IMG/VR virus record: IMGVR_UViG_3300042386_001233
Location: 62,001 to 126,000 of that record
Reading direction: 5' to 3' (one strand)
DNA length: 64,000 nucleotides
Each line of letters begins with the position of its first letter. The first letter of the stretch is position 1. This document shows positions 14,257-49,100 of this stretch, piece after piece. Both the position numbers and the translations under genes were made by a program. The notes below the pieces were generated by a model, which worked only from the letters and a program-made list of their open reading frames with translations, was not told the origin of the DNA and searched no databases.

Positions 14257-14284
14257 ATTATAGCAATGAGCCGTTGATTGTCAA
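14257..14284 (-). promoter_or_regulatory. Consensus sigma70 promoter for ssb
   Basis: TTGACA-N16-TATAAT with TGn extended -10. Confidence 0.8.
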
Positions 14285-15906: not shown

Positions 15907-15908
15907 AT

Positions 15909-16779: not shown

Positions 16780-16781
16780 GA

Positions 16782-33896: not shown

Positions 33897-35221
33897 AATA
33901 TAGTTTTATTTTGATTGTTTATTAAAAGAGTTATCCAATTAAAGAACTCATCCTGTACATTCATAATACTTGTTGGTTGATAGGGGTCAATTGGTATTTC
34001 TATAACATTTGTTGGCTTAGTTAGCTTGCCAAAAAAAGCCTCTTTACAGTCGTATGTAGAAAGCAATCTTCCCATAGAATAAAAGTCATCCGGGAATACT
34101 CTTCCTTTAGCCATAGTAAATAATGGTATATTATATAAGCATGGTATATTACATCCAGAACAATTAGTTCCAACAACGCCCATACAATAGTTTTGATAAA
34201 AACAAGCCTGTTTTTCAACTGAATATGCTATTAATACTTCTTCTCCATCAACAGATTTAGCCATATTAATTTCACTATCTGTACATGCTACAATAATAGG
34301 ATATAGTCCTCTTTTTTTAATTAGAGCACAAACATCTTTTAATTGTGCCGCAGAAGCCAAACCCGCCCTACGAGTATTATCTGAGTGTATTAAGACCGCA
34401 ATATATTTTTTATTTAAAACTATACCATTAGAATTTTTAAGTAAGATTTTATTGTTTTGAAATAAATCTTTAATAATGTCTGTACCATAGATACTTGGAA
34501 ATGTATTTTTAGAAATGCATCTGGTTAATGATTGATATTTATCAAGTTCGATATTTATACTATTATTGAGGATTACTGATTCTGAGATATGGCGTATATT
34601 ATGCATCCCATGGTTCCATGTGAATATTGGAGACCAATCAACATACCATATTTCATCAAGACCCATAATTTTATTAAAAGGCTTGACAAAAAATTTGGTC
34701 TTTTGATCTAATATTAAAATGTTATAGGTATCTTTAGATATTTCTTTTTGTGTATGTTCTTTAATTCTTACTATCGCTCTTAAGCAGTCTTGGAAGTGCT
34801 CCGTGCAGATAGCATTAGCGATATAGATTGTTTGTGGCTGTTTATTGGATAGTTTTATTTTTTCTAATCTAGTAATATCGTGATTTGTTTTCATGCTCTC
34901 TATACTATGACGAAAAAACTCACGAGCTTTAATTCTAACTTCTGATACATAGTCCCCTTTAGCACTTGGGGCGAGTTGTTCGTTTCCTGTCCAGGCCCCT
35001 TCTGAATTAATAGTTCCAATATATCTATTAAGGGACCACTTATAATTACCACAGCCATGTCTATTAAAATTGTCTGTAAAATCCCAAAATAGATTTTCTA
35101 AAAAGCAATGTACGGAATCACAATGAACGCACTTATAAGAGAATTCTGATCCTATAAATAGAATTTTTTGATGATCTTCCTTTTGGCAATTAGGGCATTT
35201 AAAGGTGGTTAAAGTTAACAT
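33893..35221 (-). CDS. Zn-ribbon fused to GT-B/GT9-like domain
   Basis: CPNC..CVHC N-terminus; YIAVLIH..VVGTNCSG..IP. Confidence 0.4.
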   Translation of the reverse strand: MLTLTTFKCPNCQKEDHQKILFIGSEFSYKCVHCDSVHCFLENLFWDFTDNFNRHGCGNYKWSLNRYIGTINSEGAWTGNEQLAPSAKGDYVSEVRIKAREFFRHSIESMKTNHDITRLEKIKLSNKQPQTIYIANAICTEHFQDCLRAIVRIKEHTQKEISKDTYNILILDQKTKFFVKPFNKIMGLDEIWYVDWSPIFTWNHGMHNIRHISESVILNNSINIELDKYQSLTRCISKNTFPSIYGTDIIKDLFQNNKILLKNSNGIVLNKKYIAVLIHSDNTRRAGLASAAQLKDVCALIKKRGLYPIIVACTDSEINMAKSVDGEEVLIAYSVEKQACFYQNYCMGVVGTNCSGCNIPCLYNIPLFTMAKGRVFPDDFYSMGRLLSTYDCKEAFFGKLTKPTNVIEIPIDPYQPTSIMNVQDEFFNWITLLINNQNKTIL

Positions 35222-35904
35222 TTATTTTTAGCAGCAAACTCTAAACTTTTAATAGTGTCTGATAAGTTTTGTGTTGAGGAGTTATTATTGGTGTCTATAA
35301 AGTATTGAGCAATAGCTTCTAGAGTATTTTTTGATAAGTGCCAAGGGCTAGATATGGACTTTATATTATTAGTATTTTCAGTTATACAAAGAGACTCTTC
35401 TGATATAATTGTGTTTAAATCAATATATTGGGTCTTATTGTTTATTAGAGAAGGCTGAACCACCTCATCAAAATACATTTTTTTTCTCTCTTGAATTCTA
35501 GATCTCATGGATGTAGCACCTATATTGTGGTACATTTCTGATCTATGCCAAGCCGCAGGGGTATCAAAAATCATCATGTTCACATTTAGAGAAGATAAAT
35601 TAAGTAGAATTTCTCTCCATATTTTAAATAGAATAGAAGTTTTTTCGCATAATACTGCCGAGTTTGACCAAGCTGTTAGTACTATTATGTTGGATGGTCT
35701 TAAAGCAGAGAATAGGTAGGTGGTTCCGCACCTTCCCCATTTAACATCAAAAAAGTGATAGTTTTTATGGTTTTTCTTGAAAATCTCTTTTATCTCTAGA
35801 AGATAACAATATCCAACACCCAGAGTAAAATTACCTTCTAGTCCAACAACCTCATCCCAGTCTGAAGATGTTTTAAATTCATTGGTTAAGCTGTCATATT
35901 TCAT
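35215..35904 (-). CDS. Hypothetical protein (possibly SGNH-like)
   Basis: Coupled ORF; C-terminal YIDL..PWHL. Confidence 0.4.
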   Translation of the reverse strand: MKYDSLTNEFKTSSDWDEVVGLEGNFTLGVGYCYLLEIKEIFKKNHKNYHFFDVKWGRCGTTYLFSALRPSNIIVLTAWSNSAVLCEKTSILFKIWREILLNLSSLNVNMMIFDTPAAWHRSEMYHNIGATSMRSRIQERKKMYFDEVVQPSLINNKTQYIDLNTIISEESLCITENTNNIKSISSPWHLSKNTLEAIAQYFIDTNNNSSTQNLSDTIKSLEFAAKNKC

Positions 35905-35975
35905 GTGATATTCTCTATGTAGTTTTTAATATAGTGATTATTAAAATCGGACGATAAAGTTACGAAACTTTCCAT
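35901..35975 (-). pseudogene. 24-aa scar-like mini-ORF
   Basis: MESFVTLSSDFNNHYIKNYIENIT; GAGGT RBS; ATGA overlap with the next gene. Confidence 0.4.
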
Positions 35976-35990
35976 TTTTACCTCTTTTTC

Positions 35991-36578
35991 TTAAATATGT
36001 ACATACCAGCAAGATATTGATTTTTCAAAAACTTGGGCAGAATGGCCGAAAATCTCTTCAACCGCAGTTGAAACCCCTTTTTCTTGATAATCATGTCCTG
36101 AGACGATTCCTCCTTTTTTAATTTTAGGCAACCATGCTTCTATATCTTTTTTTACATAATCGTACCAGTGGTTTCCGTCTATAAAAACAAAATCTAATGA
36201 TTCGTTTTCAAACAATGATGCGGCAGCAGAACTATCACTTTTTATAAGTTCAACAAAATGATTACATCCAACTTTATTTAATCTATTGACAACGAAATTA
36301 TACTTGTATTCACCAAGTTTTTTTAATCTATCTTCGTCAGACAAACCTTTTGTGTCATACAAAGATTCAATTTCTTCTTTGCCTGCCCAGGTGTCAAATA
36401 AATCTACTCCGTAAATTTTTACACCATCTTTGCTTTTGATTTTTTGCGCTAAAAAACTAATTGACAAGCCAAAAAACACACCAACTTCAACAAAAGTTTT
36501 AAAATTTTGTTTTGATATGAATTCGTAAAAGCTAGAATAGTTGAAATAATTAGGTTCATTTTTTACCATTGGCAACAC
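35991..36578 (-). CDS. Class I SAM methyltransferase (Methyltransf_24)
   Basis: VEVGVFFGLS, DFVFIDGNH, GGIVSGHDY. Confidence 0.9.
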   Translation of the reverse strand: MLPMVKNEPNYFNYSSFYEFISKQNFKTFVEVGVFFGLSISFLAQKIKSKDGVKIYGVDLFDTWAGKEEIESLYDTKGLSDEDRLKKLGEYKYNFVVNRLNKVGCNHFVELIKSDSSAAASLFENESLDFVFIDGNHWYDYVKKDIEAWLPKIKKGGIVSGHDYQEKGVSTAVEEIFGHSAQVFEKSISCWYVHI

Positions 36579-36618
36579 CTCTTTTCTTGATTTATATATT
36601 AAGCCTACTTTTATTATC

Positions 36619-37449
36619 CTATACTTCCTTGTAGTTTTTAATCACACCGTTACAGAAATCATTTAAATGCGTATTTATATCAAGAACTTTAGAGCCTCCG
36701 CCATAATGAACCCAATAAAAATCTTCCGGTGCGGAGTTTGGGTCATGTGGATTTTTCAAATAAAATAGGAGAGAAGAGTCAATACCTTTAACTATCAGAT
36801 TACTATTTTTGGATGGAAGATATTCGGTCTTTATTAGTTTTGATAATGCAAAAGCCAATAATTCATCATATGAATTCCTATCCATTTGCTTTTCGTAGTT
36901 AATTAGCGATTGAGATTTTAGAGCATATACTACTCCCAAACACCATTTTTTTTGTTTTTCAACAGACCATTCTATAAGTTCTTCAATAGTAAAACCCCAA
37001 ACTTTGTAAAAGTCATTTGGATCCCATTGTTTTGTGCTTTTTATAATTTTTTCTTTAGCATCGAAGGAGCCACCGTCTCCGACCAACATTTCCGATTCTC
37101 CCAACATATCTTTTACAGCTGAGTTAAAATCAACTTTGCCAAACAAATACATGTCGGAATCAACCCAGCAAATAATTTCTTCTGGATGTTCTTTTGCAAC
37201 TTCAATGCACTTCGTAAATTTTTGCAAGTTTGAACTTGTTCTCCAAACTTTTACTCCTATATTATTCAAAAAATCCAAGTATTTAGATTCTTGTATATCT
37301 GATATTACATAGATATCTTGTGGAAGCAGCCCGCCATTTTTAATCAGTGAAACAGCGTGGGCCGCCGCAAACATCGGATAACGATATTGTCTTTCAAAGG
37401 GCGGTTCTTGGATCCACCCGGTCCATCTTGCAATCATCACTATTTTCAT
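36619..37449 (-). CDS. GT-A glycosyltransferase
   Basis: WVDSD (DxD), DE and VHY motifs. Confidence 0.55.
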   Translation of the reverse strand: MKIVMIARWTGWIQEPPFERQYRYPMFAAAHAVSLIKNGGLLPQDIYVISDIQESKYLDFLNNIGVKVWRTSSNLQKFTKCIEVAKEHPEEIICWVDSDMYLFGKVDFNSAVKDMLGESEMLVGDGGSFDAKEKIIKSTKQWDPNDFYKVWGFTIEELIEWSVEKQKKWCLGVVYALKSQSLINYEKQMDRNSYDELLAFALSKLIKTEYLPSKNSNLIVKGIDSSLLFYLKNPHDPNSAPEDFYWVHYGGGSKVLDINTHLNDFCNGVIKNYKEV

Positions 37450-37458
37450 ATTTATTCC

Positions 37459-37572
37459 TTAATTAAACCTATCAATTAGCCATTTTTCAGACCTACTATT
37501 ACTTGAGGGACCAATTAAATTACACCTAACTAAACTCTTTTTTCCAGCACATATCTGTGTATTAGTTCTCAT
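37459..37572 (-). pseudogene. 37-aa scar-like mini-ORF
   Basis: MRTNTQICAGKKSLVRCNLIGPSSNSRSEKWLIDRFN; fills the gap and overlaps the upstream gene end. Confidence 0.35.
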
Positions 37573-38191
37573 AAGAACGATAAGGGCTTTGAGTATATTT
37601 TTTGTTTTGTCTCCAGTCAACATGTATTAAATCTATATGTTCAAACAAATTAACGATAACAACGCCAGATTTTTCGGCATTTTTTCTAAAATGATTTTCG
37701 CAATGAAGAACTCCCAAGTTCCAATCTTTGTTAAAATCATAACTTATTTTTTTGTACACCCAAGCATCTTGTGAACAAATAGTAGATATGTGTTTTTTAT
37801 TGTCTGGGTTGTGATCTGCTGCTGATGGCACTATATTACCATCTTTGGTCAAATCTTTTCTTGTCAATAAGTACAGTGTTTCTTCCCATTCGTTTATTTT
37901 ATCCAAAAAACACAATGATTCATCAAAATAAACATCAGAATTAGATAGTATTTTTATATCTTCTGGATATTCTTTATCAGCATAGTCCATCCACATTTTA
38001 TAAGAAAGTCTTGTTTGTATTGGAACAACAATCAACTTTTTATTGAAAATTGTGTCAAATTCGCAATTATCAGTAAATAGAACTAGTTTGTCTATTCTTT
38101 CATTAGAAAGGTTTTGATATAAACAGTAAAGATTGTAAGTTAGAATTTCGGGTGTGGCTTTGAACCACTGGGTGAATAGTATTTTATTCAT
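37562..38191 (-). CDS. GT-A-like glycosyltransferase
   Basis: LSNSDVYFD, LTR, SQDAW, G..CEN, H motifs. Confidence 0.6.
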   Translation of the reverse strand: MNKILFTQWFKATPEILTYNLYCLYQNLSNERIDKLVLFTDNCEFDTIFNKKLIVVPIQTRLSYKMWMDYADKEYPEDIKILSNSDVYFDESLCFLDKINEWEETLYLLTRKDLTKDGNIVPSAADHNPDNKKHISTICSQDAWVYKKISYDFNKDWNLGVLHCENHFRKNAEKSGVVIVNLFEHIDLIHVDWRQNKKYTQSPYRSYEN

Positions 38192-38317
38192 TAAGTCCTC
38201 GTGCATACAACTATGTCAGCAGGTTCGGGGATGGTTTCTTTTCCGGGCATTCCTGGGTCGTACTCGCATATAGGGAACGGCTTTTCTAACCATTTCTATA
38301 TTCTGTGTGTTGCTCAT
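38191..38317 (-). pseudogene. Frame-broken remnant of a class I methyltransferase
   Basis: KPFPICEYDPGMPGKETIPEPADIVVCT matches the YDP..P.PAD.VVCTDVLEH motif, out of frame with the ATG at 38317. Confidence 0.6.
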
Positions 38318-38335
38318 GCTTACTCTCTATAAAAT

Positions 38336-38401
38336 TCAGATGTAGATAAACCACGTTTCACATCTACTCCTTTGACTTTGGTCTAATTTAAATTTTTTCA
38401 C
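38336..38401 (-). pseudogene. 21-aa scar-like mini-ORF
   Basis: GTG start overlaps the neuA stop (GTGA); ends ETWFIYI, like a Methyltransf_24 C-terminus (compare SCWYVHI at 35991). Confidence 0.4.
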
Positions 38402-39030
38402 AATAATCTGCGCATCAATTCTAAATCCTCTAGTGTATCTAGTTGAAAACTTCTATATATAGGCATATTTACTATGCCCATTTTCCCGCTATATCTCAAA
38501 CCGGATTTTATTAAGCATTCTCTTTTAGTTATATAAATAGCACCATTTTCTACCCATTTTGCCTCCACATCTTGTCTCATTGGACGAGAAGTTGTGTCCC
38601 AATTGTCTGGACTTGTATTTAAATCCCACCTAGGATTCCAGTGTTCCTCATATGCACTAAAAATTGAATCATATTCGTTTATCATATCTAAACCACGATT
38701 AATATCATCTGGCAAAATTAATGGAGATGTTGGCTGAATAAAAACCAAGATGTCAAAATCTTGAAGACTAGCAAAGTGCAACAATGCTTCTTCGCTTTTG
38801 GATTTGTCTCCTGAAATATTTTCTGGTCGTTTAACTACATTAGATCCTAATTGCATGGCAACGCTAGCAATTTTATCGCAATTAGTGCTAACCCATACAT
38901 CATTGGCTTTGGATGCTTTGGCTGCGTCTATTGTATACTGGATTAAAGGCTTGCCATTAATATCAATGATATTTTTACCTGGTATGCCTTTGCTTCCTCC
39001 TCTAGCTAATATAAGTGTTTTTATATTCAT
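38398..39030 (-). CDS. neuA: Acylneuraminate cytidylyltransferase (CMP-nonulosonate synthetase)
   Basis: ILARGGSKGIPGKNI, QPTSPL, RQD, ENGAIY, LDTLED. Confidence 0.93.
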   Translation of the reverse strand: MNIKTLILARGGSKGIPGKNIIDINGKPLIQYTIDAAKASKANDVWVSTNCDKIASVAMQLGSNVVKRPENISGDKSKSEEALLHFASLQDFDILVFIQPTSPLILPDDINRGLDMINEYDSIFSAYEEHWNPRWDLNTSPDNWDTTSRPMRQDVEAKWVENGAIYITKRECLIKSGLRYSGKMGIVNMPIYRSFQLDTLEDLELMRRLL

Positions 39031-39036
39031 AATGTT

Positions 39037-39081
39037 TTATTTTATTTCTTTTACTCCCCAAATGTGTAGTACTTTTTTCAT
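39037..39081 (-). pseudogene. 14-aa scar-like mini-ORF
   Basis: MKKVLHIWGVKEIK resembles a methyltransferase start (KKVLH) joined to a C-terminus. Confidence 0.35.
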
Positions 39082-39087
39082 TTATTT

Positions 39088-40122
39088 TTAAGCCACTTTA
39101 TATTTTTTAAATATACTTGTATAACCAGATAAAGACTGCTTGCTTAAAATCTGGCATGTTTTTATTATGTTTTCACGCACGCTTTCGTTATTTTCTAAAT
39201 AGTATTTAGTTAAATTATAAATTTCGTTAATTTGTTCATCTAATAATGGAAATGTAAAAACGACAGGGTTTTTATACTCTAGTATTTTTTGGATGTGCAT
39301 AGTTTTATCACTATTACTTTCAAAAAATATACAAGGAGTTCCATTGAGAGATGCCATTATTGATGGATGAAATCGTCCAGAAATATAAACCTGAGCCATT
39401 TGTAGTTCTTTCATTCCCTGGTCTATATCACATTCTTTCGGTATTAATTCAAAGCCATGATCTTTAGCCAATTGTTCCATCCAATAATCTCCACCGCAGT
39501 TTTGCACTAATTTTACTTTTGCTAGTCCAGAAATCTTATCTATTAATTTTAAATATGATAATTTTTTATTTTCTATTTGATCATGATTAGGAGGAGATGA
39601 TCCCCCGCCCAGCAAAATATAATCTCCTGTTTTTATTCTGTGAGATTGCCAAGTAAACAACGCATCCGGGATATATGAATAGTCTAATTTGCTATCAATT
39701 AAATAACCCGAAATCGGATCTCTAATCACCAATTCACAACACTTAGACCAAGCTTTAAGTGCCCTATTATACGTTTCGTTATCAAAAGGAGTCTTTGGGC
39801 ATTTTGAAATCATTGCATTGACATATAAACATTTTTTGTTTATTTTGCCACAATATTCAATAACCATTAGATGTTTATCAAAATCATTCCTAATAGGAGA
39901 TCTAAATATTGGACTTCCTTCTCCATTAATTATTACTATGTCACATTCTTTTATATTTTTTTCTATTTTTGTAAAATCAGTTTTTATCAGTTCATTATTG
40001 CCAATCTTTAAAATTTTATCGGGTTTTAAAGCAGATTGTATTATTTGTAACAATGCTTTTGGAGTGGATCGACACCCCCAATTAAGCTGGTCTACATTAT
40101 ACCCTATATATAAAATTTTCAT
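39088..40122 (-). CDS. Polysaccharide pyruvyl transferase-like protein
   Basis: NWGC, IINGEG, IRDPIS, PDALF, ISGRFH..IMA...GTP. Confidence 0.8.
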   Translation of the reverse strand: MKILYIGYNVDQLNWGCRSTPKALLQIIQSALKPDKILKIGNNELIKTDFTKIEKNIKECDIVIINGEGSPIFRSPIRNDFDKHLMVIEYCGKINKKCLYVNAMISKCPKTPFDNETYNRALKAWSKCCELVIRDPISGYLIDSKLDYSYIPDALFTWQSHRIKTGDYILLGGGSSPPNHDQIENKKLSYLKLIDKISGLAKVKLVQNCGGDYWMEQLAKDHGFELIPKECDIDQGMKELQMAQVYISGRFHPSIMASLNGTPCIFFESNSDKTMHIQKILEYKNPVVFTFPLLDEQINEIYNLTKYYLENNESVRENIIKTCQILSKQSLSGYTSIFKKYKVA

Positions 40123-40943
40123 TTTCTTAAACTACCCCTCTTTATTTTTTCATTTTCAAATAATATTCTTGGACCAATAGGATATTTTGTAGAATTTTCT
40201 ATATCCCTAATGCCTTTTACTAACTTAAATACACCAGCAGGCTCCAAACTACTTAAATGGTCACTACCCCACATATTATGATTCAATGTAATGTGCCTCT
40301 CGATCCATTCTGCTCCTATTGCTACGGCAGCAAAAGTAGAAACTAATCCATATTCATGGCCACTATAACCTATTTCTTTATTTTTCCATTTATTTTTAAG
40401 CCATTTGATATAGTTTAAGTTTATTTCTTCTACCGGACAAGGATATGTACTATTAGTATGCATTATAATGTCTGGATTGCATTCGTTTATACATCTACTT
40501 ATTTCTTCTTCAGTGCTCATGCCCGTAGAGATTATAAGTGTTTTGAATTTATTTCTAACATATTTACACAAATCTAAGTCTGTGATAGAAGCAGATGCTA
40601 TCTTAGTAATGTCTGAGTATTTGCTCATGATTTCAGCGCTGGGTTTGTCCCATACACTAGCAAAAAAAATAATATTTTTATTGTCAGCGTATTCTTTAAT
40701 TTCTTTAATTTGTGCTTCTTCAAACTCTATCTTTTTTTTGTAGTCTAGATAAGACATGTCTCCCCAAGTAGTAGATCTAATTTTATTTTTTTGATTTTCT
40801 GGAACACAAAGCTCTGGAGTTCGTTTTTGAATTTTTACAAAATCACACCCAGCAATAGACGCTATGTCTATTAATTGTTTGCATATATTAGCATCGCCAT
40901 TATGATTAATGCCTATCTCGGCTATGATTTTAGTTTTAAACAA
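40119..40943 (-). CDS. neuB: N-acetylneuraminate/nonulosonate synthase (no SAF domain)
   Basis: IAEIGINHNG, VKIQKR, KIASA, STGMS, HTNSTYP, GYSGHE, IERHITL, GSDH. Confidence 0.95.
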   Translation of the reverse strand: MFKTKIIAEIGINHNGDANICKQLIDIASIAGCDFVKIQKRTPELCVPENQKNKIRSTTWGDMSYLDYKKKIEFEEAQIKEIKEYADNKNIIFFASVWDKPSAEIMSKYSDITKIASASITDLDLCKYVRNKFKTLIISTGMSTEEEISRCINECNPDIIMHTNSTYPCPVEEINLNYIKWLKNKWKNKEIGYSGHEYGLVSTFAAVAIGAEWIERHITLNHNMWGSDHLSSLEPAGVFKLVKGIRDIENSTKYPIGPRILFENEKIKRGSLRK

Positions 40944-41223
40944 GGGTATTGTCCCGTTCTGTCTCTATGGGTTCTAAAAATATTACTCCGCGCCTTGCTC
41001 CTGCGGCTTCTTCATTGTATCTGTAGACGTATTTGTCTTTGCCATATACTATATCAAAAAATTGGATGACTGGTGGGCCGAATCTACACATATACTCTGT
41101 TGTTATTCCTTCAAAACTTCCAGTTTCTAATAGTAAATCAGGCTTATGCTTTTCAATTAGTTTACTATATTCTGCTTGTAAGAAGTAATCTCCATTAAAA
41201 GGATTTAACCCTAATGTATTCAT
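40936..41223 (-). pseudogene. Internally deleted methyltransferase-like gene
   Basis: LLETGSFEGITT SAM-binding start joined directly to a terminal segment; the central DxH region is missing; only 95 aa. Confidence 0.5.
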
Positions 41224-41243
41224 GTGTTTAATTCCTTATTATT

Positions 41244-41963
41244 TTACTGTACTGTGTTTTTGAAAAATTTTAAACCTGTTATTAAACTATTTGGTGTGCC
41301 GTTATATACCGATACGCCTCTTTTTTCACACAATTCGCCATACTCACGGTATGAATTATTCATTTGATTCAGTATATTTTTTTGTCTTTCAAGATCTGAA
41401 TCGTTACAAACGCCTCCACGGCCCGTAAACCAAAACCACTCATTATACCCCATCCTAGACAAAACACTCTGAGATTCATCATAAAAATGTTTTGTTTCAC
41501 CAATATGGTTTACCCAACTATGATCTATTCCCATAACAAGTACTTGGTCAATGCTCTCTTGCTTAGCAACATAATAACCCATTTGCAAACCAATCTGAGC
41601 TATAGTTTCATAATGTCCCATGCGGTTTGGTATAGTTTCTGGGAATTGTCCATCATTATCCCAATAAATAACTTCATTATTTACAAATAAATTGTTATTT
41701 GTAACAATATGCTTATCCTTGATATGAATTAATACTTTTGTTTTTTTGTTTACACAAGTTTCACACTCTTTAAACCACGCAACTCCCATTTCATAAGTAA
41801 TAGGATGGTGCAAATGTCCAAAAATATGATACTTTACATTCATATTCTGAAATTCTGGGTGAACAAAAAAATTACTAATTGTAACACAAGGATTATCTTT
41901 TATTTTTTTTAAATCTTGGTCCTTAATAGATGGGCCGCAAGCAAATACATAGCAAGTTTTCAT
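41244..41963 (-). CDS. Maf/DUF115-like (nonulosonate) transferase
   Basis: CYVFACGPSI..DL, ISNF, MGIDHSW, HFY, VYNGTP.S. Confidence 0.65.
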   Translation of the reverse strand: MKTCYVFACGPSIKDQDLKKIKDNPCVTISNFFVHPEFQNMNVKYHIFGHLHHPITYEMGVAWFKECETCVNKKTKVLIHIKDKHIVTNNNLFVNNEVIYWDNDGQFPETIPNRMGHYETIAQIGLQMGYYVAKQESIDQVLVMGIDHSWVNHIGETKHFYDESQSVLSRMGYNEWFWFTGRGGVCNDSDLERQKNILNQMNNSYREYGELCEKRGVSVYNGTPNSLITGLKFFKNTVQ

Positions 41964-42038
41964 ATATAATATTTTTTATAAGTTTTTATTGTTTCGTTAA
42001 AGTAATCATCATATATTGTTTTTAATGGTAATATTTCA

Positions 42039-42110
42039 TTATACATACTCAATGATGTATACTCTTGATGCATTACAACATTTCGCAATTATCAACAAAT
42101 AGTACTTCAT
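42039..42110 (-). pseudogene. 23-aa scar-like mini-ORF
   Basis: MKYYLLIIAKCCNASRVYIIEYV; ATGA overlap with the epimerase stop. Confidence 0.3.
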
Positions 42111-42958
42111 TTATGCCTCATGTGAAACTTAATTGTTTTGGACAGCCCATAATCCATATCAGTGTAATCAAATTTAAAGTTAGTATTTTTTGGAGAGTTA
42201 GCCGAAACAATTTGTTTTGAATTGTTGTATTTTATATCTATGCTCCTATTCATCTTATCCATAATAAGTTCATGTAGATTTTTTATTGTTATTGTATTCT
42301 TTGTATTAAAAACTATCTTATTACAATACACATTATTGTTTAAAAGGTGTTCTACTATTTTCAATATGTCATCTATGTATAATAAGTTAACTTGAGTTTT
42401 TTCATTACAATCAACAAATACTTTATCGTAGTTAGAAATCTTAAATATGGAAGCAGGAACAATCCTACTTTGTTCGCTAAATAAATCGTGCTCTCCATAG
42501 GCATTAGTCAAAAAAAGACACAATATCTTTATTTGTTCGGAGTAAGCTTTGATATAATAGTCTAAAACTTTCTTTGATAACAAATACCCAGAGTTGTTTT
42601 TTATCTCTGATAGATGAACATCACTTTCACTATATTGTTCGGCATCTCCGAAAACTCTGTATGTTGAAAATACTACTAATTTTGTTTTGAATTTTGAGCA
42701 CACAGAAAAAACATTGTGTAGAATTTTGTTGTTTCTTTCAAATATTTCTAAGTCATCAATATTACCTATGGAACTGCCGACCACTCCAGCACAGTTGATA
42801 ACGACTGTTGGCCTTATGCTATTAAGGTAAACAAACAATTCTTCATAATTTTCTAAGTTCAGATTGTCATTATAAAATACTTGGGAGTTGAATTTGCTTA
42901 TGAAATTCTTGCCAAAAAAGCCCCTTGATCCCAATATTAAAACTTTTTCTGCGTTCAT
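42107..42958 (-). CDS. NAD-dependent epimerase/reductase (GDP-L-fucose synthase-like SDR)
   Basis: GSRGFFG, VINCAGVVG, YLLSK, TNAYGEHD. Confidence 0.85.
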   Translation of the reverse strand: MNAEKVLILGSRGFFGKNFISKFNSQVFYNDNLNLENYEELFVYLNSIRPTVVINCAGVVGSSIGNIDDLEIFERNNKILHNVFSVCSKFKTKLVVFSTYRVFGDAEQYSESDVHLSEIKNNSGYLLSKKVLDYYIKAYSEQIKILCLFLTNAYGEHDLFSEQSRIVPASIFKISNYDKVFVDCNEKTQVNLLYIDDILKIVEHLLNNNVYCNKIVFNTKNTITIKNLHELIMDKMNRSIDIKYNNSKQIVSANSPKNTNFKFDYTDMDYGLSKTIKFHMRHK

Positions 42959-43674
42959 GTCTTTATAGCAAAAGCTACTCCGTAACCAATCTCAGTAAAA
43001 CAATAATCAGTTAAGTTATTATGTTTGCTTATTACAGATTTCCATACATCTAATAAATAGCGGTGTTGAGGATGAGATATGTCATCAAAAACAAGAACTC
43101 CACCCACAGAAAGATAAGGTATAACATCTTCTAAATCTTTGGTTGCCCCCTCCGCAGAGTGATCTCCGTCTACGGTAATTAAATCAAATTTCAAATCTGA
43201 ATTTGTATTAAAAAAAGACGGTAATGTTTCATGACTGTTGCCGTTGATAAAATGAACTTTGCCACAATGTTCATGACGAGATAATTCTTGTTGTACAAAA
43301 TTTGATCCGGGATTATCCATATTGGCATAATTAGACACCCACATATCAAAAGCACAAATATCAACCGAAGGACATCCTCTTACAACAGTGCACGCAGACC
43401 GACCACGACGAACCCCTATTTCTAAATAATTTTTTGGCTTTAAAACTTTAGAAGCAGAGTATAATACATTGATAATATCCAAATAGAACCAATTTTTTCC
43501 ATAAAGATTAATACATTTGTTATACCATCTGTCAAGATATTTAACATAATCGTCTGTTGCTAATTGACGATGAAAAGATAGAATCTCTTGCCATGTTTCA
43601 TGGCTAGATGCTATATTAACCAAAGTAGCAGGATTCAAAAAAGCTTCACCGTAAAATTTTTTAGTCATATTCAT
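42955..43674 (-). CDS. Class I SAM methyltransferase (Methyltransf_24)
   Basis: YLEIGVRRGRS, FDLITVDGDHS, GGVLVFDD. Confidence 0.9.
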   Translation of the reverse strand: MNMTKKFYGEAFLNPATLVNIASSHETWQEILSFHRQLATDDYVKYLDRWYNKCINLYGKNWFYLDIINVLYSASKVLKPKNYLEIGVRRGRSACTVVRGCPSVDICAFDMWVSNYANMDNPGSNFVQQELSRHEHCGKVHFINGNSHETLPSFFNTNSDLKFDLITVDGDHSAEGATKDLEDVIPYLSVGGVLVFDDISHPQHRYLLDVWKSVISKHNNLTDYCFTEIGYGVAFAIKT

Positions 43675-43711
43675 TTCCTTTAAGAAATCTTCTATCGTTC
43701 CAAGAACTCAT
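43661..43711 (-). pseudogene. 16-aa scar-like mini-ORF
   Basis: MSSWNDRRFLKGNEYD; TGATG coupling upstream and overlap with the next ATG. Confidence 0.3.
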
Positions 43712-44421
43712 CAACATTTCTCCTTTGTCAAAAATTCTTCAATTGTAATCAAATTCAAGTAATAATTTCTTTTTGCGGCAAATTTATTGAACTCATAAAA
43801 AGGATTATCAAATTCGCAACACTTTTGACTTCCTTTTTTTATTATGCCCACCCCCATATCTTCGGTGTTCACAGAGTACATCTCTAAATCTGGTCTTGTT
43901 ACTCTCATCTTGTAGAAAGTTTTCCAAACAGTTCCATTCCAATATCCCAAATTAAAACCATAAGTGACTTTGTCAAATTGATTTGTTGAGACTTTGTACT
44001 GATAATCTTCTCGGGCAGTATGAATAGTTGCTGGATTTATGTCGTGAACTACAATTATCCCAGACGGACTCAGGTGGTTTAAGGAATTTAGTATGTCTTT
44101 TTCAACTTGCTCAGCAAGATGCAAGCCGTCAATAAATATTATGTCCCACTTATAATCTTTGTTTAAGTCCAAAGAACCCATATCAAGTAATTCAAAGAAT
44201 TTATCTGATGTAAATTTGTATGTTATTTTGTGATATTCTTCTGCAATTTTAGGATCATAATATTTTTCGTGTCCAGGGTCCACGGAATGTTTTGTGGGAC
44301 ATTCTATTTTATTAAAACATTCATCCGGTATTCTGACCCCTATTTCTAGATAGTTTTTGAATTTTTTGGTTTTTATCAAGTAATTTATTATATCATTTCT
44401 CCACATCACAATTGCCTCCAA
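43711..44421 (-). CDS. Class I SAM methyltransferase (Methyltransf_24)
   Basis: YLEIGV, SVDP, DIIFIDGLH, IVVHD, WNGTVWK. Confidence 0.9.
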   Translation of the reverse strand: MEAIVMWRNDIINYLIKTKKFKNYLEIGVRIPDECFNKIECPTKHSVDPGHEKYYDPKIAEEYHKITYKFTSDKFFELLDMGSLDLNKDYKWDIIFIDGLHLAEQVEKDILNSLNHLSPSGIIVVHDINPATIHTAREDYQYKVSTNQFDKVTYGFNLGYWNGTVWKTFYKMRVTRPDLEMYSVNTEDMGVGIIKKGSQKCCEFDNPFYEFNKFAAKRNYYLNLITIEEFLTKEKC

Positions 44422-45316
44422 AGATATTGTAGAACATAGTTCCTGGTTTTATTTTTAACTTCATATCAGTATTAATGTATAATTTTGCATTGTTCTTATC
44501 CATCATCTCTCTGTGTAGGTTTATATGGTCATTATCGTCTGTTGGTTCTGAAAAATTTCTGGCATCAACACCTACATTGCATTTGCTGTCTTGACAAATT
44601 CCACACTTGTGCAAGCCCAAGTAGCTGCAACCCTTCATGCTCTTTAATCTGTATAGTCCCATGCCATTGAAACAAGACTGAACTGGTACTAGTTTGTCAT
44701 TTGATCTAGACGCTTCAAATATAATTTTACTGAATGTCTTTGTGTGTTGTCTGTAGTCCTGCTTCGGATAATAGCAAGTAGAAAAAACATTATTGGCAAA
44801 ATACGAGTCTTTGTGTCTTAATGCCCAGTAATCAAAGTAGTAAAAATCTTCATTGATACAACCCATCATGTCCCATTCATCAAGATCGTATTGAAAGCAT
44901 GTTAAAATTCCATCAATGCTTATCTCCCAAAAAACTTCATCTAAATCACAGTGCAAAGCATACTCATAAGTATTTTCTAGGCTGTTTTCAAATATGTATT
45001 TTAGAATAGAGTTTCTACAATAAGCTAATCTTTGTGTTCTAGAAGGCATTGTGTTTGCTAGACCATCTTCCAAGATGATGTGTTTTTTTATTTTGCTGCT
45101 ACTTTTTTTCCAATCTTTTAGTAGATTTCTTGTTTTGTCTGATGAATCATTTTCAAAAATAATGCACAGTACATTATCAAAAACATCAGATATCTTGTCA
45201 ATATTTGAAAAAGACTTTGCGAAATGTTCTTCTATGTTCCTTATTGAACCATAGATGATCAAGTTTGTTTTTTTAACCTTGTTTTTAGCTTCGTCTGGAG
45301 ATGATATTTTTTTCAT
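44393..45316 (-). CDS. GT-A glycosyltransferase (CAP59/GT69-like)
   Basis: IFENDSSDKT, RLAYCRN, DLD, DYWALR, VQSCFNG, H. Confidence 0.75.
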   Translation of the reverse strand: MKKISSPDEAKNKVKKTNLIIYGSIRNIEEHFAKSFSNIDKISDVFDNVLCIIFENDSSDKTRNLLKDWKKSSSKIKKHIILEDGLANTMPSRTQRLAYCRNSILKYIFENSLENTYEYALHCDLDEVFWEISIDGILTCFQYDLDEWDMMGCINEDFYYFDYWALRHKDSYFANNVFSTCYYPKQDYRQHTKTFSKIIFEASRSNDKLVPVQSCFNGMGLYRLKSMKGCSYLGLHKCGICQDSKCNVGVDARNFSEPTDDNDHINLHREMMDKNNAKLYINTDMKLKIKPGTMFYNIFGGNCDVEK

Positions 45317-45347: not shown

Positions 45348-46157
45348 TTATGTTGAGAAATATTGGATTACTTTATTGTTAAAACTTTCTTTTCTATTGT
45401 ACTGATGAATAATTGAATACACCTTATTCAGATTGTCTGTGATTTTGATTCCGTCAATATTAATTCCATGACTATTGATTAGCTTATCAGAAAAACCAAA
45501 ACCAGCAGCTAACATCAGGCTAAAATTACTAGGAGCAAATTGATAGTTATAAGGATAAGGATATTGTTTAGAATAGATTATTTTCATTAATATTCCTTGG
45601 TCTGATCCGGTAAAACAACGATGTGTCTTATCGTGTTCAGAAACAATTAGACTACAAATAATATCTAAAGAAGTTTTGTCTCCTGCAATTATACCACTAT
45701 TAATTATTGGCTCTTCTATAAAACGATCTGCTATCTCATAACCATAAACATTTTTAATAATGTCATAATTCCACTGTATATCTTTAATTAAAGCATTTTC
45801 AGACGACAAAACCAACCCAGATTGATACGTTTCTAAGTCTAAGAAAGGATCTTTTTGCAAATAAACATCTGTGCAATCACTCAGTATTATATGGTGATAC
45901 GTAGTTTGACTAAGGTATTCTTTATATGCTTGAAATCTATCTATATAAAGGCTATCGATTTGTTTCTTGATTTTGACAATTGAAACATCGTAATCTTTTG
46001 CAAATTCTTTTATCTCTTCTCCCGAACCATCGTCAGAAGCATCTAGCAGAACAGTATCAAAGCTTTTATTTTTTAAGGAATAAGAGCTCTTTATAAACAC
46101 CTTTATTCCTTCAAGAGATTTTACGTTATAAAAATAACCAATTAATAAGTTTTTCAT
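45348..46157 (-). CDS. GT-A glycosyltransferase
   Basis: RF..Y, LSDCTDVYLQKDPF, INSGIIAG, DQG, HQYNR. Confidence 0.75.
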   Translation of the reverse strand: MKNLLIGYFYNVKSLEGIKVFIKSSYSLKNKSFDTVLLDASDDGSGEEIKEFAKDYDVSIVKIKKQIDSLYIDRFQAYKEYLSQTTYHHIILSDCTDVYLQKDPFLDLETYQSGLVLSSENALIKDIQWNYDIIKNVYGYEIADRFIEEPIINSGIIAGDKTSLDIICSLIVSEHDKTHRCFTGSDQGILMKIIYSKQYPYPYNYQFAPSNFSLMLAAGFGFSDKLINSHGINIDGIKITDNLNKVYSIIHQYNRKESFNNKVIQYFST

Positions 46158-46789
46158 AGTTTACCAATCCAATTATTTAAAAATTGATTTATAACCCTTG
46201 TTCTATTGTGTAGATAAATTCCCCAGTATTTATTATTTTTTTGTGATTCCTCCAAAGAAAACTCTGGCATACTTTGGGAAAGATCATATGTCCGAATATC
46301 CAAGTTTTTTTCCTCTTCTATCGTACTTTTACATAAATTACAGTTTAGTATAAGATGCATTTCAAATTTAAGCTTGGGATTTTTTCTAGTTAAAAATTGA
46401 TAAATGTTTTTTGACAACTTTATTTCATCTAGTTGCTCTGGTGTTGGCTTTGTTTTTAAAGAGGAACAATCAAAATGATGGTTAGAAGAATGGCCCAGCC
46501 TAATGAAAAGTAACTCATCGTTAACGGAATCTATTAATTGAAACAATCTCTCAATTCTTCTTTCATATTTTGTAATGTCTTTAGGAAAAGAATCATGCAT
46601 AAAGCGAATATAGTCGGTAGAACTTTCTCCATCGTTAGGGAAAAAATTATCGAACTTATTTTCCAATAAAATATCTATTCCATAGTAAGAAACTACCCAA
46701 TCAAAAGGATACGCTTCTTGTCTTATATTTTTATCTTTAAAATAACTGGCTAAAGAACAGTCTACGCCTAAAGATACTATGTGTTTCAT
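46154..46789 (-). CDS. DUF1796 putative papain-like cysteine peptidase
   Basis: SLGVDC, R..AYPFDW, F.H, KYERRIERL, LFIR. Confidence 0.8.
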   Translation of the reverse strand: MKHIVSLGVDCSLASYFKDKNIRQEAYPFDWVVSYYGIDILLENKFDNFFPNDGESSTDYIRFMHDSFPKDITKYERRIERLFQLIDSVNDELLFIRLGHSSNHHFDCSSLKTKPTPEQLDEIKLSKNIYQFLTRKNPKLKFEMHLILNCNLCKSTIEEEKNLDIRTYDLSQSMPEFSLEESQKNNKYWGIYLHNRTRVINQFLNNWIGKL

Positions 46790-46803
46790 TTATAAATACC
46801 TGC

Positions 46804-47064
46804 TTAAGCTGGTGGTGCTGGTAGGGCCGTTCTTGTACAATTGCCACCCTCATTAACAAAACAATACGCATCACCATTACTAAAAACAGTAAAACCTAAC
46901 ATCTGAGCCACGGTCTTAAATTCTTCTGAAACATCCTCATACTTGGTGGGACGATAAACAACCGCACCATTCATCCCAAGAAAAGTAAGATATCTTCTCA
47001 CTGTATAACTAGTATCTTTTGGGATCTTAAAACCATCACTCTTGGTATATTCATCTTCTGTCAT
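46804..47064 (-). CDS. Hypothetical protein
   Basis: 86-aa ORF with ATGA coupling. Confidence 0.5.
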   Translation of the reverse strand: MTEDEYTKSDGFKIPKDTSYTVRRYLTFLGMNGAVVYRPTKYEDVSEEFKTVAQMLGFTVFSNGDAYCFVNEGGNCTRTALPAPPA

Positions 47065-48116
47065 AAAACTTCCTTTGGTAATAGGCTTACATAATAGCTT
47101 TTAAATTGTTCTTTAAAAGAATCACACTGCCCTAGCGCCGACAAGAAAGACTCAAGCATTCCTTGTTTATTTTTTGGATTGGTATTTTTTTGCCACCATT
47201 TCCATGCGTTCAAAGAAATGAAATCATAAAACTCTCTATCTTGAAGCTTAGCATATGCGTCTACAAAAGACGACGGGCTTTGTAAATCAAATGCCACATA
47301 ATGATAATCAGGAATCAGCGGGTCGGCATATCCGATCTCAAACTTGGGAGATATACACGGAATACATTGGGCAAAATATTCATATTCTCTGTAGCAGGCG
47401 AGTCCCAGGCCGGGAAGAGTTAATCCTATTCTAGATCTAGATAGTTTTTCTTGGTAGTCTTGATACATTTTTTGAATAATAATATCTGCATAAACCAAGC
47501 CCTCAATACCTTTTGTTAAACCAAAAGGAACTGAACATAGACCAATATAAGACATCGGAGGAAAATATTTTTCAAGTAATCTGCAACTCTCTGAGCGTAC
47601 CATACCAGTATCTCTATTTGTTCTATCTGTTCCAGTGAATATTAAGTTTATATCTTTGTCAAAATTAGAAATCCAATTTTCACATGGCTTTGTTTTCCAT
47701 CTTCCATATTCCCAGGCGTGTCCAACCCATGGTACAACCTTATGTCTACAGCCTCCTAAAGTTTTACTTTTTTCATCATTGTCAATTCCTATACCTTTGT
47801 TATTATAAAAGCCTTCTTTCTCTCTATACGCATATTTAACAATAAACCAAGCATCAAAGTCATTTATAGCCGGAGTAATATAAGAAGTCTCTCTTTCATC
47901 TATTACAATAGGTTTACATCCCTCTATTCTGATAATAGTATAATGTTGACCGTGTGGATTCCCAAATTGTTCTTTTACGCATGGTCTGGAGTTGAGAGAG
48001 ATTTTCCAGTCTAGTTTTGACTCTAGTTCTTTAAAAAGTATACGGTACATCCAATCTACATAAGGGAAAAAAGTATTCTCTGCTGATCCCCTCATTGCTT
48101 GAATAGTAACGTTCAT
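47061..48116 (-). CDS. GT-B glycosyltransferase-like protein
   Basis: YQEKLSRSRIGLTLPGLG..CYREYE..LIPDYHYV. Confidence 0.65.
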   Translation of the reverse strand: MNVTIQAMRGSAENTFFPYVDWMYRILFKELESKLDWKISLNSRPCVKEQFGNPHGQHYTIIRIEGCKPIVIDERETSYITPAINDFDAWFIVKYAYREKEGFYNNKGIGIDNDEKSKTLGGCRHKVVPWVGHAWEYGRWKTKPCENWISNFDKDINLIFTGTDRTNRDTGMVRSESCRLLEKYFPPMSYIGLCSVPFGLTKGIEGLVYADIIIQKMYQDYQEKLSRSRIGLTLPGLGLACYREYEYFAQCIPCISPKFEIGYADPLIPDYHYVAFDLQSPSSFVDAYAKLQDREFYDFISLNAWKWWQKNTNPKNKQGMLESFLSALGQCDSFKEQFKSYYVSLLPKEVL

Positions 48117-48838
48117 TTAGTAATCTCCTTCAGAATACCAGTTTTATAGTATTCTCTAATAGCTTGGGCATAATCAGCCTTAGGAGGATCTCCTCCTTTA
48201 TAATATTTATTTCTTAGGTCAATGGGGTGCCATTGATGATAAAGGTCTGTGTCTGTTTCTCGAAACACTTTTAATCCATTTTTAATACAATTGTAAAGGA
48301 ATATAGTATCTTCTCCACCCCAACAATTCATAGAAATCCAAGGTGGCAACTTCAATAGATCTTTATGCCTAATCCATAAGTTACCCACACTCTCTAAAAC
48401 CTTATGTCCATTCAACCCATCTTCTGCCAAAAAATATGGAGCAAAAAACCCGACAGCATTGTCCGTGTTAAATCTAGCCTCTATACGCTCAATAAAAGAC
48501 TTTGTTACTATCACATCAACATCTAAATAGACTAAAAAGTCATCTTCAGTAAACAAATCACGAGAATAATTTAGACCCTCCCCCTTATCAAAAAATTCCG
48601 AATTTGTTTGAATTATCTCATAGTCTAGTTTGTCTTTTAATTTATTGGGCATCCAGTCGTATAAAGGATAGTCGTCAGAATGAAAATCATAAACATAAAG
48701 CTTATAATTAAATGAAGAGCTTGAGATAGCATTTATTATAGAATCTATACAATTAGGATAAAGATACAGCGTTTGCTGCCCATCTATTATCTTAGATCTA
48801 TTTTTAATAACTTGAAATATATTAATAGTCTGTGTCAT
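48113..48838 (-). CDS. GT2/GT7-like glycosyltransferase
   Basis: DFHSDD, GLN, YLDVD, WGGED, HQWH. Confidence 0.8.
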   Translation of the reverse strand: MTQTINIFQVIKNRSKIIDGQQTLYLYPNCIDSIINAISSSSFNYKLYVYDFHSDDYPLYDWMPNKLKDKLDYEIIQTNSEFFDKGEGLNYSRDLFTEDDFLVYLDVDVIVTKSFIERIEARFNTDNAVGFFAPYFLAEDGLNGHKVLESVGNLWIRHKDLLKLPPWISMNCWGGEDTIFLYNCIKNGLKVFRETDTDLYHQWHPIDLRNKYYKGGDPPKADYAQAIREYYKTGILKEITK

Positions 48839-48841
48839 AAA

Positions 48842-49090: not shown

Positions 49091-49100
49091 AATTGACTCC

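What the first reader, a model, noticed from the sequence alone, without database searches (positions are those of the whole stretch)
35901..43711. Series of translationally coupled scar-like mini-ORFs between glycan genes
Seen: most gaps in this 8 kb contain a 14-37 aa ORF (35901-35975, 37459-37572, 38336-38401, 39037-39081, 42039-42110, 43661-43711). Most overlap a neighbouring gene's start or stop (ATGA, GTGA, TGATG). Some read like a gene start fused to a gene end (MKKVLH|IWGVKEIK; VKKFKL..|ETWFIYI). Inference: genes were removed by internal deletion, leaving start and stop stubs that preserve coupling along the operon. This would record rapid cassette turnover of the glycan code.
Basis: partly seen in the sequence, partly recalled or inferred. 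Interest (0 to 1): 0.6.

Follow-up and report, generated by a model that had tools for sequence, protein, structure and literature searches.

The report
Gene relics at phage cassette junctions
The short gaps between sugar-modification genes of this freshwater jumbo phage are partly leftover pieces of genes that were displaced when gene cassettes were swapped, and the mini-ORFs seen in them are mostly by-products of that debris; this is an ordinary mark of phage mosaic evolution, not a new coupling device.

Summary
The six mini-ORFs exist on the minus strand as stated. The sequence is not an assembly collapse: four lake metagenome runs from 2018-2024 each cover 37400-43390 in one contig without a difference. 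As plain ORFs of 14 aa or more they occur at the chance rate genome-wide. As ORFs that bridge a whole gap they are enriched in the region (5 of 7 gaps, 1.3 expected).

Three of the seven gaps hold relics of genes that are full-length elsewhere:
- Gap 37450-37561 holds the frameshifted 3' end of a 245-aa gene that is intact in a related phage.
- Gap 41964-42106 holds the last 111 nt (98.7% identical) of a GT8-like gene that is intact in another relative.
- Gap 38207-38397 holds a 27-codon internal piece of a Methyltransf_23 methyltransferase.

Only mini-ORF 2 reads a relic frame. Mini-ORF 5 lies in a different frame from its relic and mini-ORF 3 lies outside its relic. No window mini-ORF is a start-to-end fusion, but one relative carries a 60-aa in-frame fusion of the 214-aa gene. 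Gaps 1, 4 and 6 have no counterpart in what I could search.

Verdict: this is cassette-turnover debris in a hypervariable glycan island, a known kind of phage mosaicism. Preservation of translational coupling is untested.

The parts
37463..37562 (-). Relic 1: the 3' end of a 245-aa gene that is full-length in a relative (L008:12168-12905). A 1-nt deletion shifts the frame of its 5' part. Its stop TAA (37459-37461) overlaps the SD AAGGA of gene 36619-37449.
   Evidence: blastn 79% over 101 nt. Aligned peptide KKSLVRCNLIGPSSNSRSEKWLIDRF against KKSLVRCNLVGPSSNKTTEKWLIKRF, tblastx E 1.6e-11.
37459..37572 (-). Its last 27 aa are the relic's ancestral frame. Its ATG lies inside the 3' end of gene 37562-38206 and is fortuitous.
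   Evidence: Identical in L033, so it gives no information on constraint.
38200..38286 (-). Relic 2: an internal piece of 27-29 codons from a Methyltransf_23-type SAM methyltransferase (PFPICEYDPGMPGKETIPEPADIVVCT). It lacks the GCG motif I and the DVLEH motif. It ends flush with the SD (GAGGA) of the 214-aa gene. It is GC-rich compared with its surroundings.
   Evidence: tblastn E 2e-3 and 4e-3 to two phage methyltransferases. phmmer gave 19 hits at E<=1e-3 in 1.84 billion proteins, best 3.4e-8, up to 81% identity. Eight of the 10 hits scanned carry a Methyltransf_23 domain, and the match lies inside it (or inside another methyltransferase-domain stretch in P0001). There is no other copy in the 244-kb genome.
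38336..38401 (-). It lies in the 5' part of gap 3, outside the methyltransferase relic, and does not reach the next gene.
   Evidence: No counterpart in relatives.
41964..42074 (-). Relic 3: the last 111 nt of a GT8-like 286-aa gene that is full-length in a relative (L012:9144-10004). The ancestral frame is still open (ORF 41960-42088, 42 aa). Its stop overlaps the ATG of gene 41244-41963 (ATGA), as in the relative.
   Evidence: 98.7% identity across 41250-42074. Alignment and frames. tblastx E 1.3e-23. Pfam Glyco_transf_8 for the full-length gene is sub-threshold: E 2e-4, 21.4 bits against a cutoff of 24.3.
42039..42110 (-). It overlaps relic 3 but is in a different frame, so it is an incidental ORF.
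42083..42106 (-). Possible second fragment: 23 of 24 nt match the VLFVDNCE stretch of the 214-aa gene family (the relative's allele). Suggestive only.
35901..35975 (-). It bridges gap 1 and ends in ATGA with gene 35215-35904. No counterpart was found. A 97%-identical contig (L033) has a real gene directly after the methyltransferase instead.
39037..39081 (-). It lies inside a block of about 1.4 kb that is close to 100% identical to the relative, so it is uninformative. No counterpart was found.
43661..43711 (-). An ORF bridging this gap is expected by chance (P 0.80). Frame 0 of the gap reads TIEDFLKE, which resembles the upstream gene's C-terminus TIEEFLTKE, but the DNA similarity is not significant.
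37562..38191 (-). The 214-aa-family gene (209 aa from ATG 38191), of unknown function. It is a recombination hub: intragenic recombinants exist, a second copy exists in a relative, and so does an internally deleted 60-aa copy (L008:11958-12140).
40146..41249 (-). Cassette of NeuB plus a 95-aa ORF. It is present here and absent from relative relA, where gene 41244-41963 directly precedes the pyruvyl-transferase gene. The last 8-9 codons of NeuB lie in the block shared with relA.
38398..39030 (-). CTP_transf_3 cytidylyltransferase gene. It contains an intragenic recombination breakpoint near 38721: about 100% identity to relA upstream of it and 62-73% downstream.

Best explanation
The window comes from a 244-kb freshwater jumbo phage. 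Positions of roughly 32.2-45.3 kb form a hypervariable island of sugar-modification genes: NeuB, a CMP-sugar synthetase, an epimerase, a pyruvyl transferase, several methyltransferases and several glycosyltransferases.

Related phages differ here by replacement, insertion and deletion of single genes or small cassettes. They also differ by homologous exchange inside shared genes.

When a cassette is lost or replaced, the cut usually falls some way upstream of the start of the next retained gene. A piece of the old upstream gene is then stranded. This can be its 3' end, or an internal fragment after repeated events. These stranded pieces make up the 'gaps'.

Because they were coding until recently, they are poor in stop codons in the old frame. 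Because the old gene ended at the next gene's start, an ORF in that frame ends there too. This produces mini-ORFs that appear to couple neighbouring genes.

- **Shown:** gaps 2, 3 and 5 are relics, the island is mosaic, and the sequence is stable in the field.
- **Inferred:** relics persist because deletions that reach the downstream ribosome-binding site or start are selected against, and the remainder has not yet decayed.
- **Inferred:** the remaining mini-ORFs (1, 3, 4, 6) are chance ORFs or relics whose parents have not been sampled.
- **Inferred:** the peptides have no function of their own.
For: - **Mosaic structure.** blastn and protein maps against relatives show sharp identity transitions, indels of whole genes and intragenic breakpoints.
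- **Relics.** Gap 2, gap 5 and gap 3.
- **The same kinds of debris in relatives.** A 60-aa in-frame fusion stub appears in three assemblies. relA has a chimeric ORF and a frameshifted 5' stub. There is also an 'MKIL' start stub.
- **Position of the relics.** All three window relics abut the SD or start of the downstream gene.
- **Chance rates.** Plain mini-ORFs are at the chance rate genome-wide. The excess of gap-bridging ORFs in the region is carried by the relic frames.
- **No regulatory signal.** There is no excess of promoter- or terminator-like sites, no Rfam match, no significant RNA fold in gap 3 and no sequence shared among the gaps.
- **Gene calls.** An independent gene call on a public assembly calls no gene in these gaps.
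- **Field stability.**
Against: - Gaps 1, 4 and 6, the 40-nt gap 36579-36618 and the 5' 100 nt of gap 3 have no identified parent gene. For these, 'relic' is extrapolation.
- Gaps 1 and 4 are both bridged by an ORF although each has only about 0.13-0.15 chance. This leaves room for a functional reading.
- No expression data exist: none of the 24 listed runs that hold the stretch is on record as RNA.
- No diverged copies of the relics were found, so neutrality was not tested.
- Only about 7 related viral contigs and 6 metagenome contigs were available.
Confidence: 0.75

Rival explanations
1. Genes were removed by internal deletions that kept their start and stop. The resulting mini-ORFs are maintained because they relay ribosomes (translational coupling) along the operon.
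For: - One relative carries exactly such a product: a 60-aa in-frame N+C fusion that overlaps the upstream gene by ATGA and ends 27 nt before the next gene.
- In the window, five of seven gaps are bridged by one sense ORF against 1.3 expected.
- Mini-ORFs 1, 2, 4 and 6 run from the upstream stop region to the downstream start region.
Against: - None of the window's identified relics keeps the lost gene's start. They are a 3' end with a frameshift, a 3' end and an internal fragment.
- Mini-ORFs 3 and 5 stop 76-145 nt short of the next gene.
- Overlaps such as ATGA or GTGA need only a permissive base before TGA.
- Plain mini-ORFs are at the chance rate genome-wide.
- There is no evidence of conservation or of translation.
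Confidence: 0.1
2. Pure chance. The mini-ORFs are random open frames in AT-rich intergenic DNA, and the gaps have no history worth reading.
For: - Genome-wide, sense mini-ORFs number 56 of 92 against 51 shuffled and 51 antisense.
- A bridging ORF in gap 6 is expected by chance (P 0.80), and gaps 1 and 4 are each at 0.13-0.15.
- No counterparts were found for gaps 1, 4 and 6.
Against: Three gaps have statistically solid homology to coding sequence of full-length genes elsewhere. So chance cannot be the whole explanation, although it may hold for ORFs 1, 3, 4, 5 and 6 taken as ORFs.
Confidence: 0.1
3. The gaps carry regulatory elements that mediate cassette shuffling, namely promoters, terminators or PeSL-like promoter-stem-loop cassettes as in T4-type phages. 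The mini-ORFs are irrelevant.
For: PeSL-mediated shuffling is documented in hyperplastic regions of T4-type phages (PMC2839356, PMC4122927). Gap 3 has a 7-bp hairpin followed by a T-rich stretch.
Against: - Promoter-like sites number 57 against 49.8 +/- 7.3, and terminator-like sites 3 against 3.7; none lies in a gap.
- No sequence is repeated among the gaps or elsewhere in the genome.
- The gap 3 fold has z = 0.27.
- There is no Rfam family match.
- The phage's own promoter type is unknown, so this rival is not fully excluded.
Confidence: 0.05

Closest known systems
Mosaic module exchange in tailed phages by illegitimate or short-homology recombination near gene boundaries (Hendrix/Hatfull model; e.g. 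mycobacteriophages, PMC3029335)
   Same: Closely related genomes show sharp identity discontinuities, with exchange units of one or a few genes and joints close to gene starts and stops. No conserved boundary sequence is present. Leftover or duplicated gene ends sit at the joints; that paper describes an inserted gene sharing its 18 C-terminal residues with the upstream gene.
   Different: Here the events are concentrated in a glycan-gene island of an uncultured freshwater jumbo phage. Several joints also lie inside shared genes, through homologous exchange between diverged alleles.
Hyperplastic regions of T4-type phages shuffled through PeSL promoter-stem-loop cassettes (PMC2839356, PMC4122927)
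   Same: A variable region of non-essential genes lies between conserved core blocks. Near relatives differ there by insertion, deletion and replacement of single genes.
   Different: The defining repeated promoter-plus-terminator cassette is absent. No repeats occur among the gaps and there is no excess of promoter- or terminator-like sites.
Hypervariable glycosyltransferase-rich islands of aquatic myophages (pelagimyophage and cyanomyophage host-recognition clusters, PMC7029224)
   Same: A large non-syntenic island rich in glycosyltransferases and LPS- or sugar-related genes, in aquatic phages with large genomes. The proposed role is alteration of the host surface.
   Different: This phage is not T4-like. 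It has a DnaE-type polymerase with at most 35% identity to any cultured phage, and the island sits beside nucleotide-metabolism genes. That paper does not describe relics at the junctions.
Gene remnants at cassette junctions of bacterial O-antigen and capsule loci (from my own knowledge, not checked in a paper here)
   Same: Sugar-pathway and transferase genes are swapped as cassettes, and truncated pseudogene fragments mark earlier gene content.
   Different: Those are host chromosomal loci, often with IS elements or conserved flanking genes that drive the exchange. No mobile-element signature was seen here.

Membership tests
Phage mosaic junction with gene relic (illegitimate or homologous recombination debris) | Abrupt change of nucleotide identity between otherwise related genomes at the feature | tested here: met
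   Joints at 42074, 41250/40145, about 38721, 38200, 37562/37463 and 36570/35995
Phage mosaic junction with gene relic (illegitimate or homologous recombination debris) | The non-coding stretch is homologous to part of a gene that is full-length elsewhere | tested here: met
   Met for gap 2, gap 5 and gap 3. Not met for gaps 1, 4 and 6 with the databases available.
Phage mosaic junction with gene relic (illegitimate or homologous recombination debris) | The fragment is incomplete or disrupted, so it cannot encode the parent function | tested here: met
   Gap 2 keeps about 33 of 245 codons with a frameshift. Gap 5 keeps 37 of 286 codons. Gap 3 keeps 27 codons and lacks SAM-binding motif I.
Internal-deletion stub (start fused to end of one gene) | The N-terminal codons and the C-terminal codons of the same gene are joined in frame | tested here: not met
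   Not met for any window mini-ORF. Met only in a relative, L008:11958-12140.
Translationally coupled small ORF (functional relay or leader peptide) | Start at or near the upstream stop and stop at or near the downstream start | tested here: inconclusive
   True for ORFs 1, 2, 4 and 6, and for the 42-aa relic ORF in gap 5. Not true for ORFs 3 and 5. The geometry is also what 3' relics would give.
Translationally coupled small ORF (functional relay or leader peptide) | The open frame is conserved across diverged relatives, or translation is shown | not testable with these tools
   All available copies of the gaps are identical. None of the listed runs that hold the stretch is on record as RNA.
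PeSL-type regulatory shuffling cassette | A repeated promoter plus stem-loop terminator motif flanks the variable genes | tested here: not met
Methyltransf_23 SAM-dependent methyltransferase (for the gap 3 fragment) | A complete domain with the glycine-rich SAM-binding motif I and the acidic post-I and motif II regions | tested here: not met
   Only the PFPI..EYDP..PAD.VVCT segment is present. Pfam finds no domain in the 34-aa peptide. Full-length relatives carry LDYGCG upstream and DVLEH downstream of this segment, and both are absent here.

The most novel reading that the evidence does not exclude
Relic-derived mini-ORFs are retained under selection as 'coupling bridges'. After a cassette is lost, the stranded 3' end of the old gene acquires a start codon at the new upstream stop. 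This is seen in mini-ORF 2 and in the 60-aa stub of the relative. Terminating ribosomes are thereby passed on to the next gene, which buffers operon expression against rapid cassette turnover.
Probability: 0.07. Interest if true: 0.6.

Novelty: new member of a known kind. Interest (0 to 1): 0.3.

Why it matters
The finding gives a base-level record of how a glycan-modification island in an abundant, uncultured lake phage turns over. The phage was found in 229 blocks of the assembly collection and in lake-water runs from 2018-2024. Single genes are replaced, deleted or recombined internally, and the debris dates and orders the events.

The relics show that this lineage once carried a GT8-like transferase, a 245-aa gene of unknown function and a Methyltransf_23 methyltransferase at these positions. 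For annotation, the practical lesson is that small ORFs in such islands should be checked against relatives before they are called genes.

It does not reveal a new mechanism.

Tried and rejected
- **Megablast of the region against GenBank phages:** no match.
- **Rfam scan of 35000-45000:** only one sub-threshold chance hit.
- **RNA fold of gap 3:** z = 0.27.
- **Promoter and terminator scan:** at the shuffle level.
- **Short-word blast of all gaps against the whole genome:** no repeats.
- **Gap 3 DNA against the full records of five relatives:** only 14-nt chance hits.
- **blastn 'distant' of gap 3 against phages:** only AT-rich chance hits.
- **tblastn of the gap 1 peptide against phages:** nothing.
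- **Degenerate peptide patterns for gaps 1 and 4 in IMG/VR:** only the already known contigs.
- **Relatives of gene 43711-44421 (L017, L018):** unrelated contexts, no information on gap 6.
- **Similarity of gap 6 to the upstream gene's 3' end:** not significant at DNA level, P = 0.14.
- **Pfam on the relic peptides themselves:** nothing.
- **Junction microhomology for the relative's 60-aa stub:** none evident when the window allele is used as proxy parent. This is inconclusive because the true parent is unknown.
- **Constraint on gap 2 from the 97%-identical contig L033:** uninformative, because all differences are clustered in two recombinant segments outside the gap.
- **The look-up of encoding contigs for the 229-aa protein:** 16 contigs, all with the same neighbourhood.

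Full report
**Context.** The window is bases 62001-126000 of a 243,821-bp IMG/VR virus record with direct terminal repeats. GC content is 36%. The window encodes a DnaE-type polymerase, primase, DnaB-like helicase, UvsX-like recombinase, class II ribonucleotide reductase and dCMP deaminase. No cultured phage is closer than about 35% identity at the polymerase. Runs that hold the sequence are all lake-water metagenomes.

All genes of the region of interest lie on the minus strand. They form a sugar-modification set:
- two Methyltransf_24 methyltransferases (35991-36578 and 42955-43674) and a third, weaker one (43711-44421);
- a CTP_transf_3 cytidylyltransferase (38398-39030);
- a polysaccharide pyruvyl transferase (39088-40122);
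- NeuB (40119-40943);
- an NAD-dependent epimerase/dehydratase (42107-42958);
- a GT-D-like protein and a CAP59-like transferase;
- several proteins without a family.

**The observation.** The sequence is not an assembly artefact:
- Five independent contigs are 99.98-100% identical across the region.
- Twenty-four lake runs from 2018-2024 hold all sampled words.
- In four of those runs a single contig spans 37400-43390 with no difference, no indel and no alternative joint.

**Chance.** Counted as sense ORFs of 14 aa or more in gaps of 30 nt or more between co-directional genes, the genome has 56 of 92. Shuffles give 51.3 +/- 3.6 and the antisense strand gives 51, so such ORFs are what AT-rich DNA produces. 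The region has 6 of 7 against 3.1 expected, but the region was picked for this property.

A sharper statistic counts ORFs that run from the upstream stop to the downstream start. This gives 5 of 7 gaps in the region against 1.3 +/- 0.8. Genome-wide the figure is 29 of 78 against 13.9. That excess comes mostly from gaps of 116-250 nt (7 against 0.9), which are evidently real genes under my 60-aa calling limit. Per-gap chance values in the region are 0.126, 0.049, 0.152, 0.007 and 0.80 for gaps 1, 2, 4, 5 and 6.

**Relatives.** Protein-seeded scans of IMG/VR and JGI metagenomes gave four groups:
- near-identical contigs;
- 'relA' (3300044647_002431 and 3300044635_001663);
- 'relB' (3300034280_001042, 3300034062_007299 and a JGI contig);
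- L033, a 3.2-kb contig that is 97% identical.

The conserved flanks (RNR, dCMP deaminase, genes 45348-51115) are 41-89% identical at the protein level, the nearest ones (RNR, dCMP deaminase, 45348-46157) 80-89%. Between them, gene content differs gene by gene.

**Gap 2 (37450-37561).** Positions 37463-37562 are 79% identical to the last 100 nt of a 245-aa gene of relB (L008:12168-12905). In relB this gene lies between the 214-aa-family gene and the methyltransferase.
- The last 27 residues of mini-ORF 2 are that protein's C-terminus (tblastx E 1.6e-11).
- Further upstream the homology continues in another frame because of a 1-nt deletion.
- The ATG of mini-ORF 2 lies inside the end of the upstream gene (…TATGAGAACTAA).

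The gap is therefore a 5'-truncated, frameshifted 3' relic, and the start of mini-ORF 2 is fortuitous. The relic's stop overlaps the SD of the next gene (36619-37449), which relB lacks.

**Gap 5 (41964-42106).** Positions 41250-42074 are 98.7% identical to relA. There the 111 nt upstream of the gene start are the 3' end of a 286-aa GT8-like gene (L012:9144-10004; Pfam match sub-threshold, E 2e-4).
- The ancestral frame is still open (ORF 41960-42088) and keeps the ATGA overlap with gene 41244-41963.
- The 24 nt directly after the epimerase stop match a piece of the 214-aa gene family at 23 of 24 positions. This is a possible second fragment.

**Gap 3.** The GC-rich half encodes PFPICEYDPGMPGKETIPEPADIVVCT (38280-38200).
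- It matches the middle of small methyltransferases of Roseobacter phage CRP-9 and of a Caudoviricetes genome (tblastn E 2e-3 and 4e-3).
- In a full HMMER search of 1.84 billion proteins, 19 proteins match at E<=1e-3 (best 3.4e-8, up to 81% identity). The match lies in a methyltransferase domain in 8 of the 10 hits scanned against Pfam (Methyltransf_23 in seven; in P0001 the Methyltransf_23 call lies elsewhere), and four of those are fused to an MptE-like domain.
- Full-length relatives have LDYGCG before this segment and DVLEHIEP after it. Both are missing here, and the genome has no other copy.
- The fragment ends exactly at the SD (GAGGA) of the 214-aa gene, whose conserved start is ATG 38191.
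- Mini-ORF 3 lies in the other half of the gap, for which I found no parent.
- In relA, about 7 kb of other genes occupy the position of this gap.

**Gaps 1, 4 and 6.**
- Gap 4 lies in a block of about 1.4 kb that is close to 100% identical to relA, so it is uninformative.
- In place of gap 1, L033 and relB have a real gene directly after the methyltransferase. That gene shares nothing detectable with gap 1.
- Gap 6 is only 36 nt, and an ORF across it is expected by chance.
- Searches for parents of these gaps found nothing.

**The same process in relatives.**
- relB carries a 60-aa ORF (L008:11958-12140) made of the first 31 (of 33 stub codons matching up to the join) and the last roughly 27 codons of the 214-aa gene, joined in frame. 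It overlaps its upstream gene by ATGA and is identical in three assemblies. relB also has a full-length second copy.
- relA has a chimeric 121-aa ORF whose last 52 residues are the C-terminus of the window's 269-aa protein. It also has a frameshifted 5' stub of the window's 307-aa transferase, and a 16-aa 'MKIL…' start stub ahead of its 214-aa gene.
- Several joints lie inside shared genes. The cytidylyltransferase switches from about 100% to 62-73% identity near 38721. L033 is a recombinant within the 214-aa gene and within the methyltransferase.

**Alternatives.** There is no repeated element, no excess of promoter- or terminator-like sites, no Rfam family and no significant fold in the gaps. 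A PeSL-like mechanism (PMC2839356) is therefore not supported. The pattern fits the general mosaic model for tailed phages, in which joints fall close to gene boundaries and functional products are kept (PMC3029335). Glycosyltransferase-rich hypervariable islands are known in aquatic phages with large genomes (PMC7029224).

**Conclusion.** The gaps of this island do record cassette turnover. The mechanism is mostly truncation and replacement that strands 3' ends or internal fragments next to the retained downstream gene, not internal deletion that fuses a start to a stop. Most of the listed mini-ORFs are incidental. Whether any relic ORF helps translation of the next gene is open, and I rate it unlikely.

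Noticed in passing
window 14281-18650 (-): The DnaE-type (Pol III alpha-like) polymerase is split into two ORFs. ORF 16782-18650 matches profile positions 41-613 and ORF 14281-15906 matches positions 622-1053. A 232-aa RNase_T/DnaQ-like exonuclease ORF (15909-16607) lies between them.
   Followed up: partly
window 40119-40943 (-): The NeuB ORF is 274 aa, has a TTG start and lacks the C-terminal SAF/antifreeze-like domain of the 349-aa synthases. It aligns only to about residues 17-271 of those. Its last 8-9 codons lie in the block shared with relA, where the NeuB cassette is absent. It may therefore be 3'-truncated, although a 290-aa solved NeuB exists.
   Followed up: partly
genome-wide (G000), gaps of 116-250 nt: Seven of 27 such co-directional gaps are spanned by a single sense ORF of under 60 aa, against 0.9 expected and 0 on the antisense strand. 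These are probably real small genes that a 60-aa cutoff misses.
   Followed up: no
L012:3995-4505 (relative relA): A chimeric 121-aa ORF combines a 68-aa unique N-terminus with the last 52 aa of the window's 269-aa protein. It is followed by a frameshifted 5' stub (about 42 codons) of the window's CAP59-like 307-aa transferase.
   Followed up: partly
window 40109-40126 and 41971-41989: In run X14 a 503-nt low-depth contig touches both places about 300 nt apart, although they lie 1.8 kb apart in the window. It may be a minor variant or another phage with a different cassette between the same joints.
   Followed up: no
window 3-5684 (+): A frame of at least 1,893 aa on the plus strand runs off the start of the window. 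It is the only long plus-strand gene in a mostly minus-strand window.
   Followed up: no
window 38194-38295 (-) and its database relatives: Four of the ten full-length relatives of the methyltransferase relic that I scanned against Pfam are fused to an MptE-like (PF01973) domain. From my own knowledge this domain family includes nonulosonic-acid transferases, which would fit the NeuB and CMP-sugar genes of this island.
   Followed up: no
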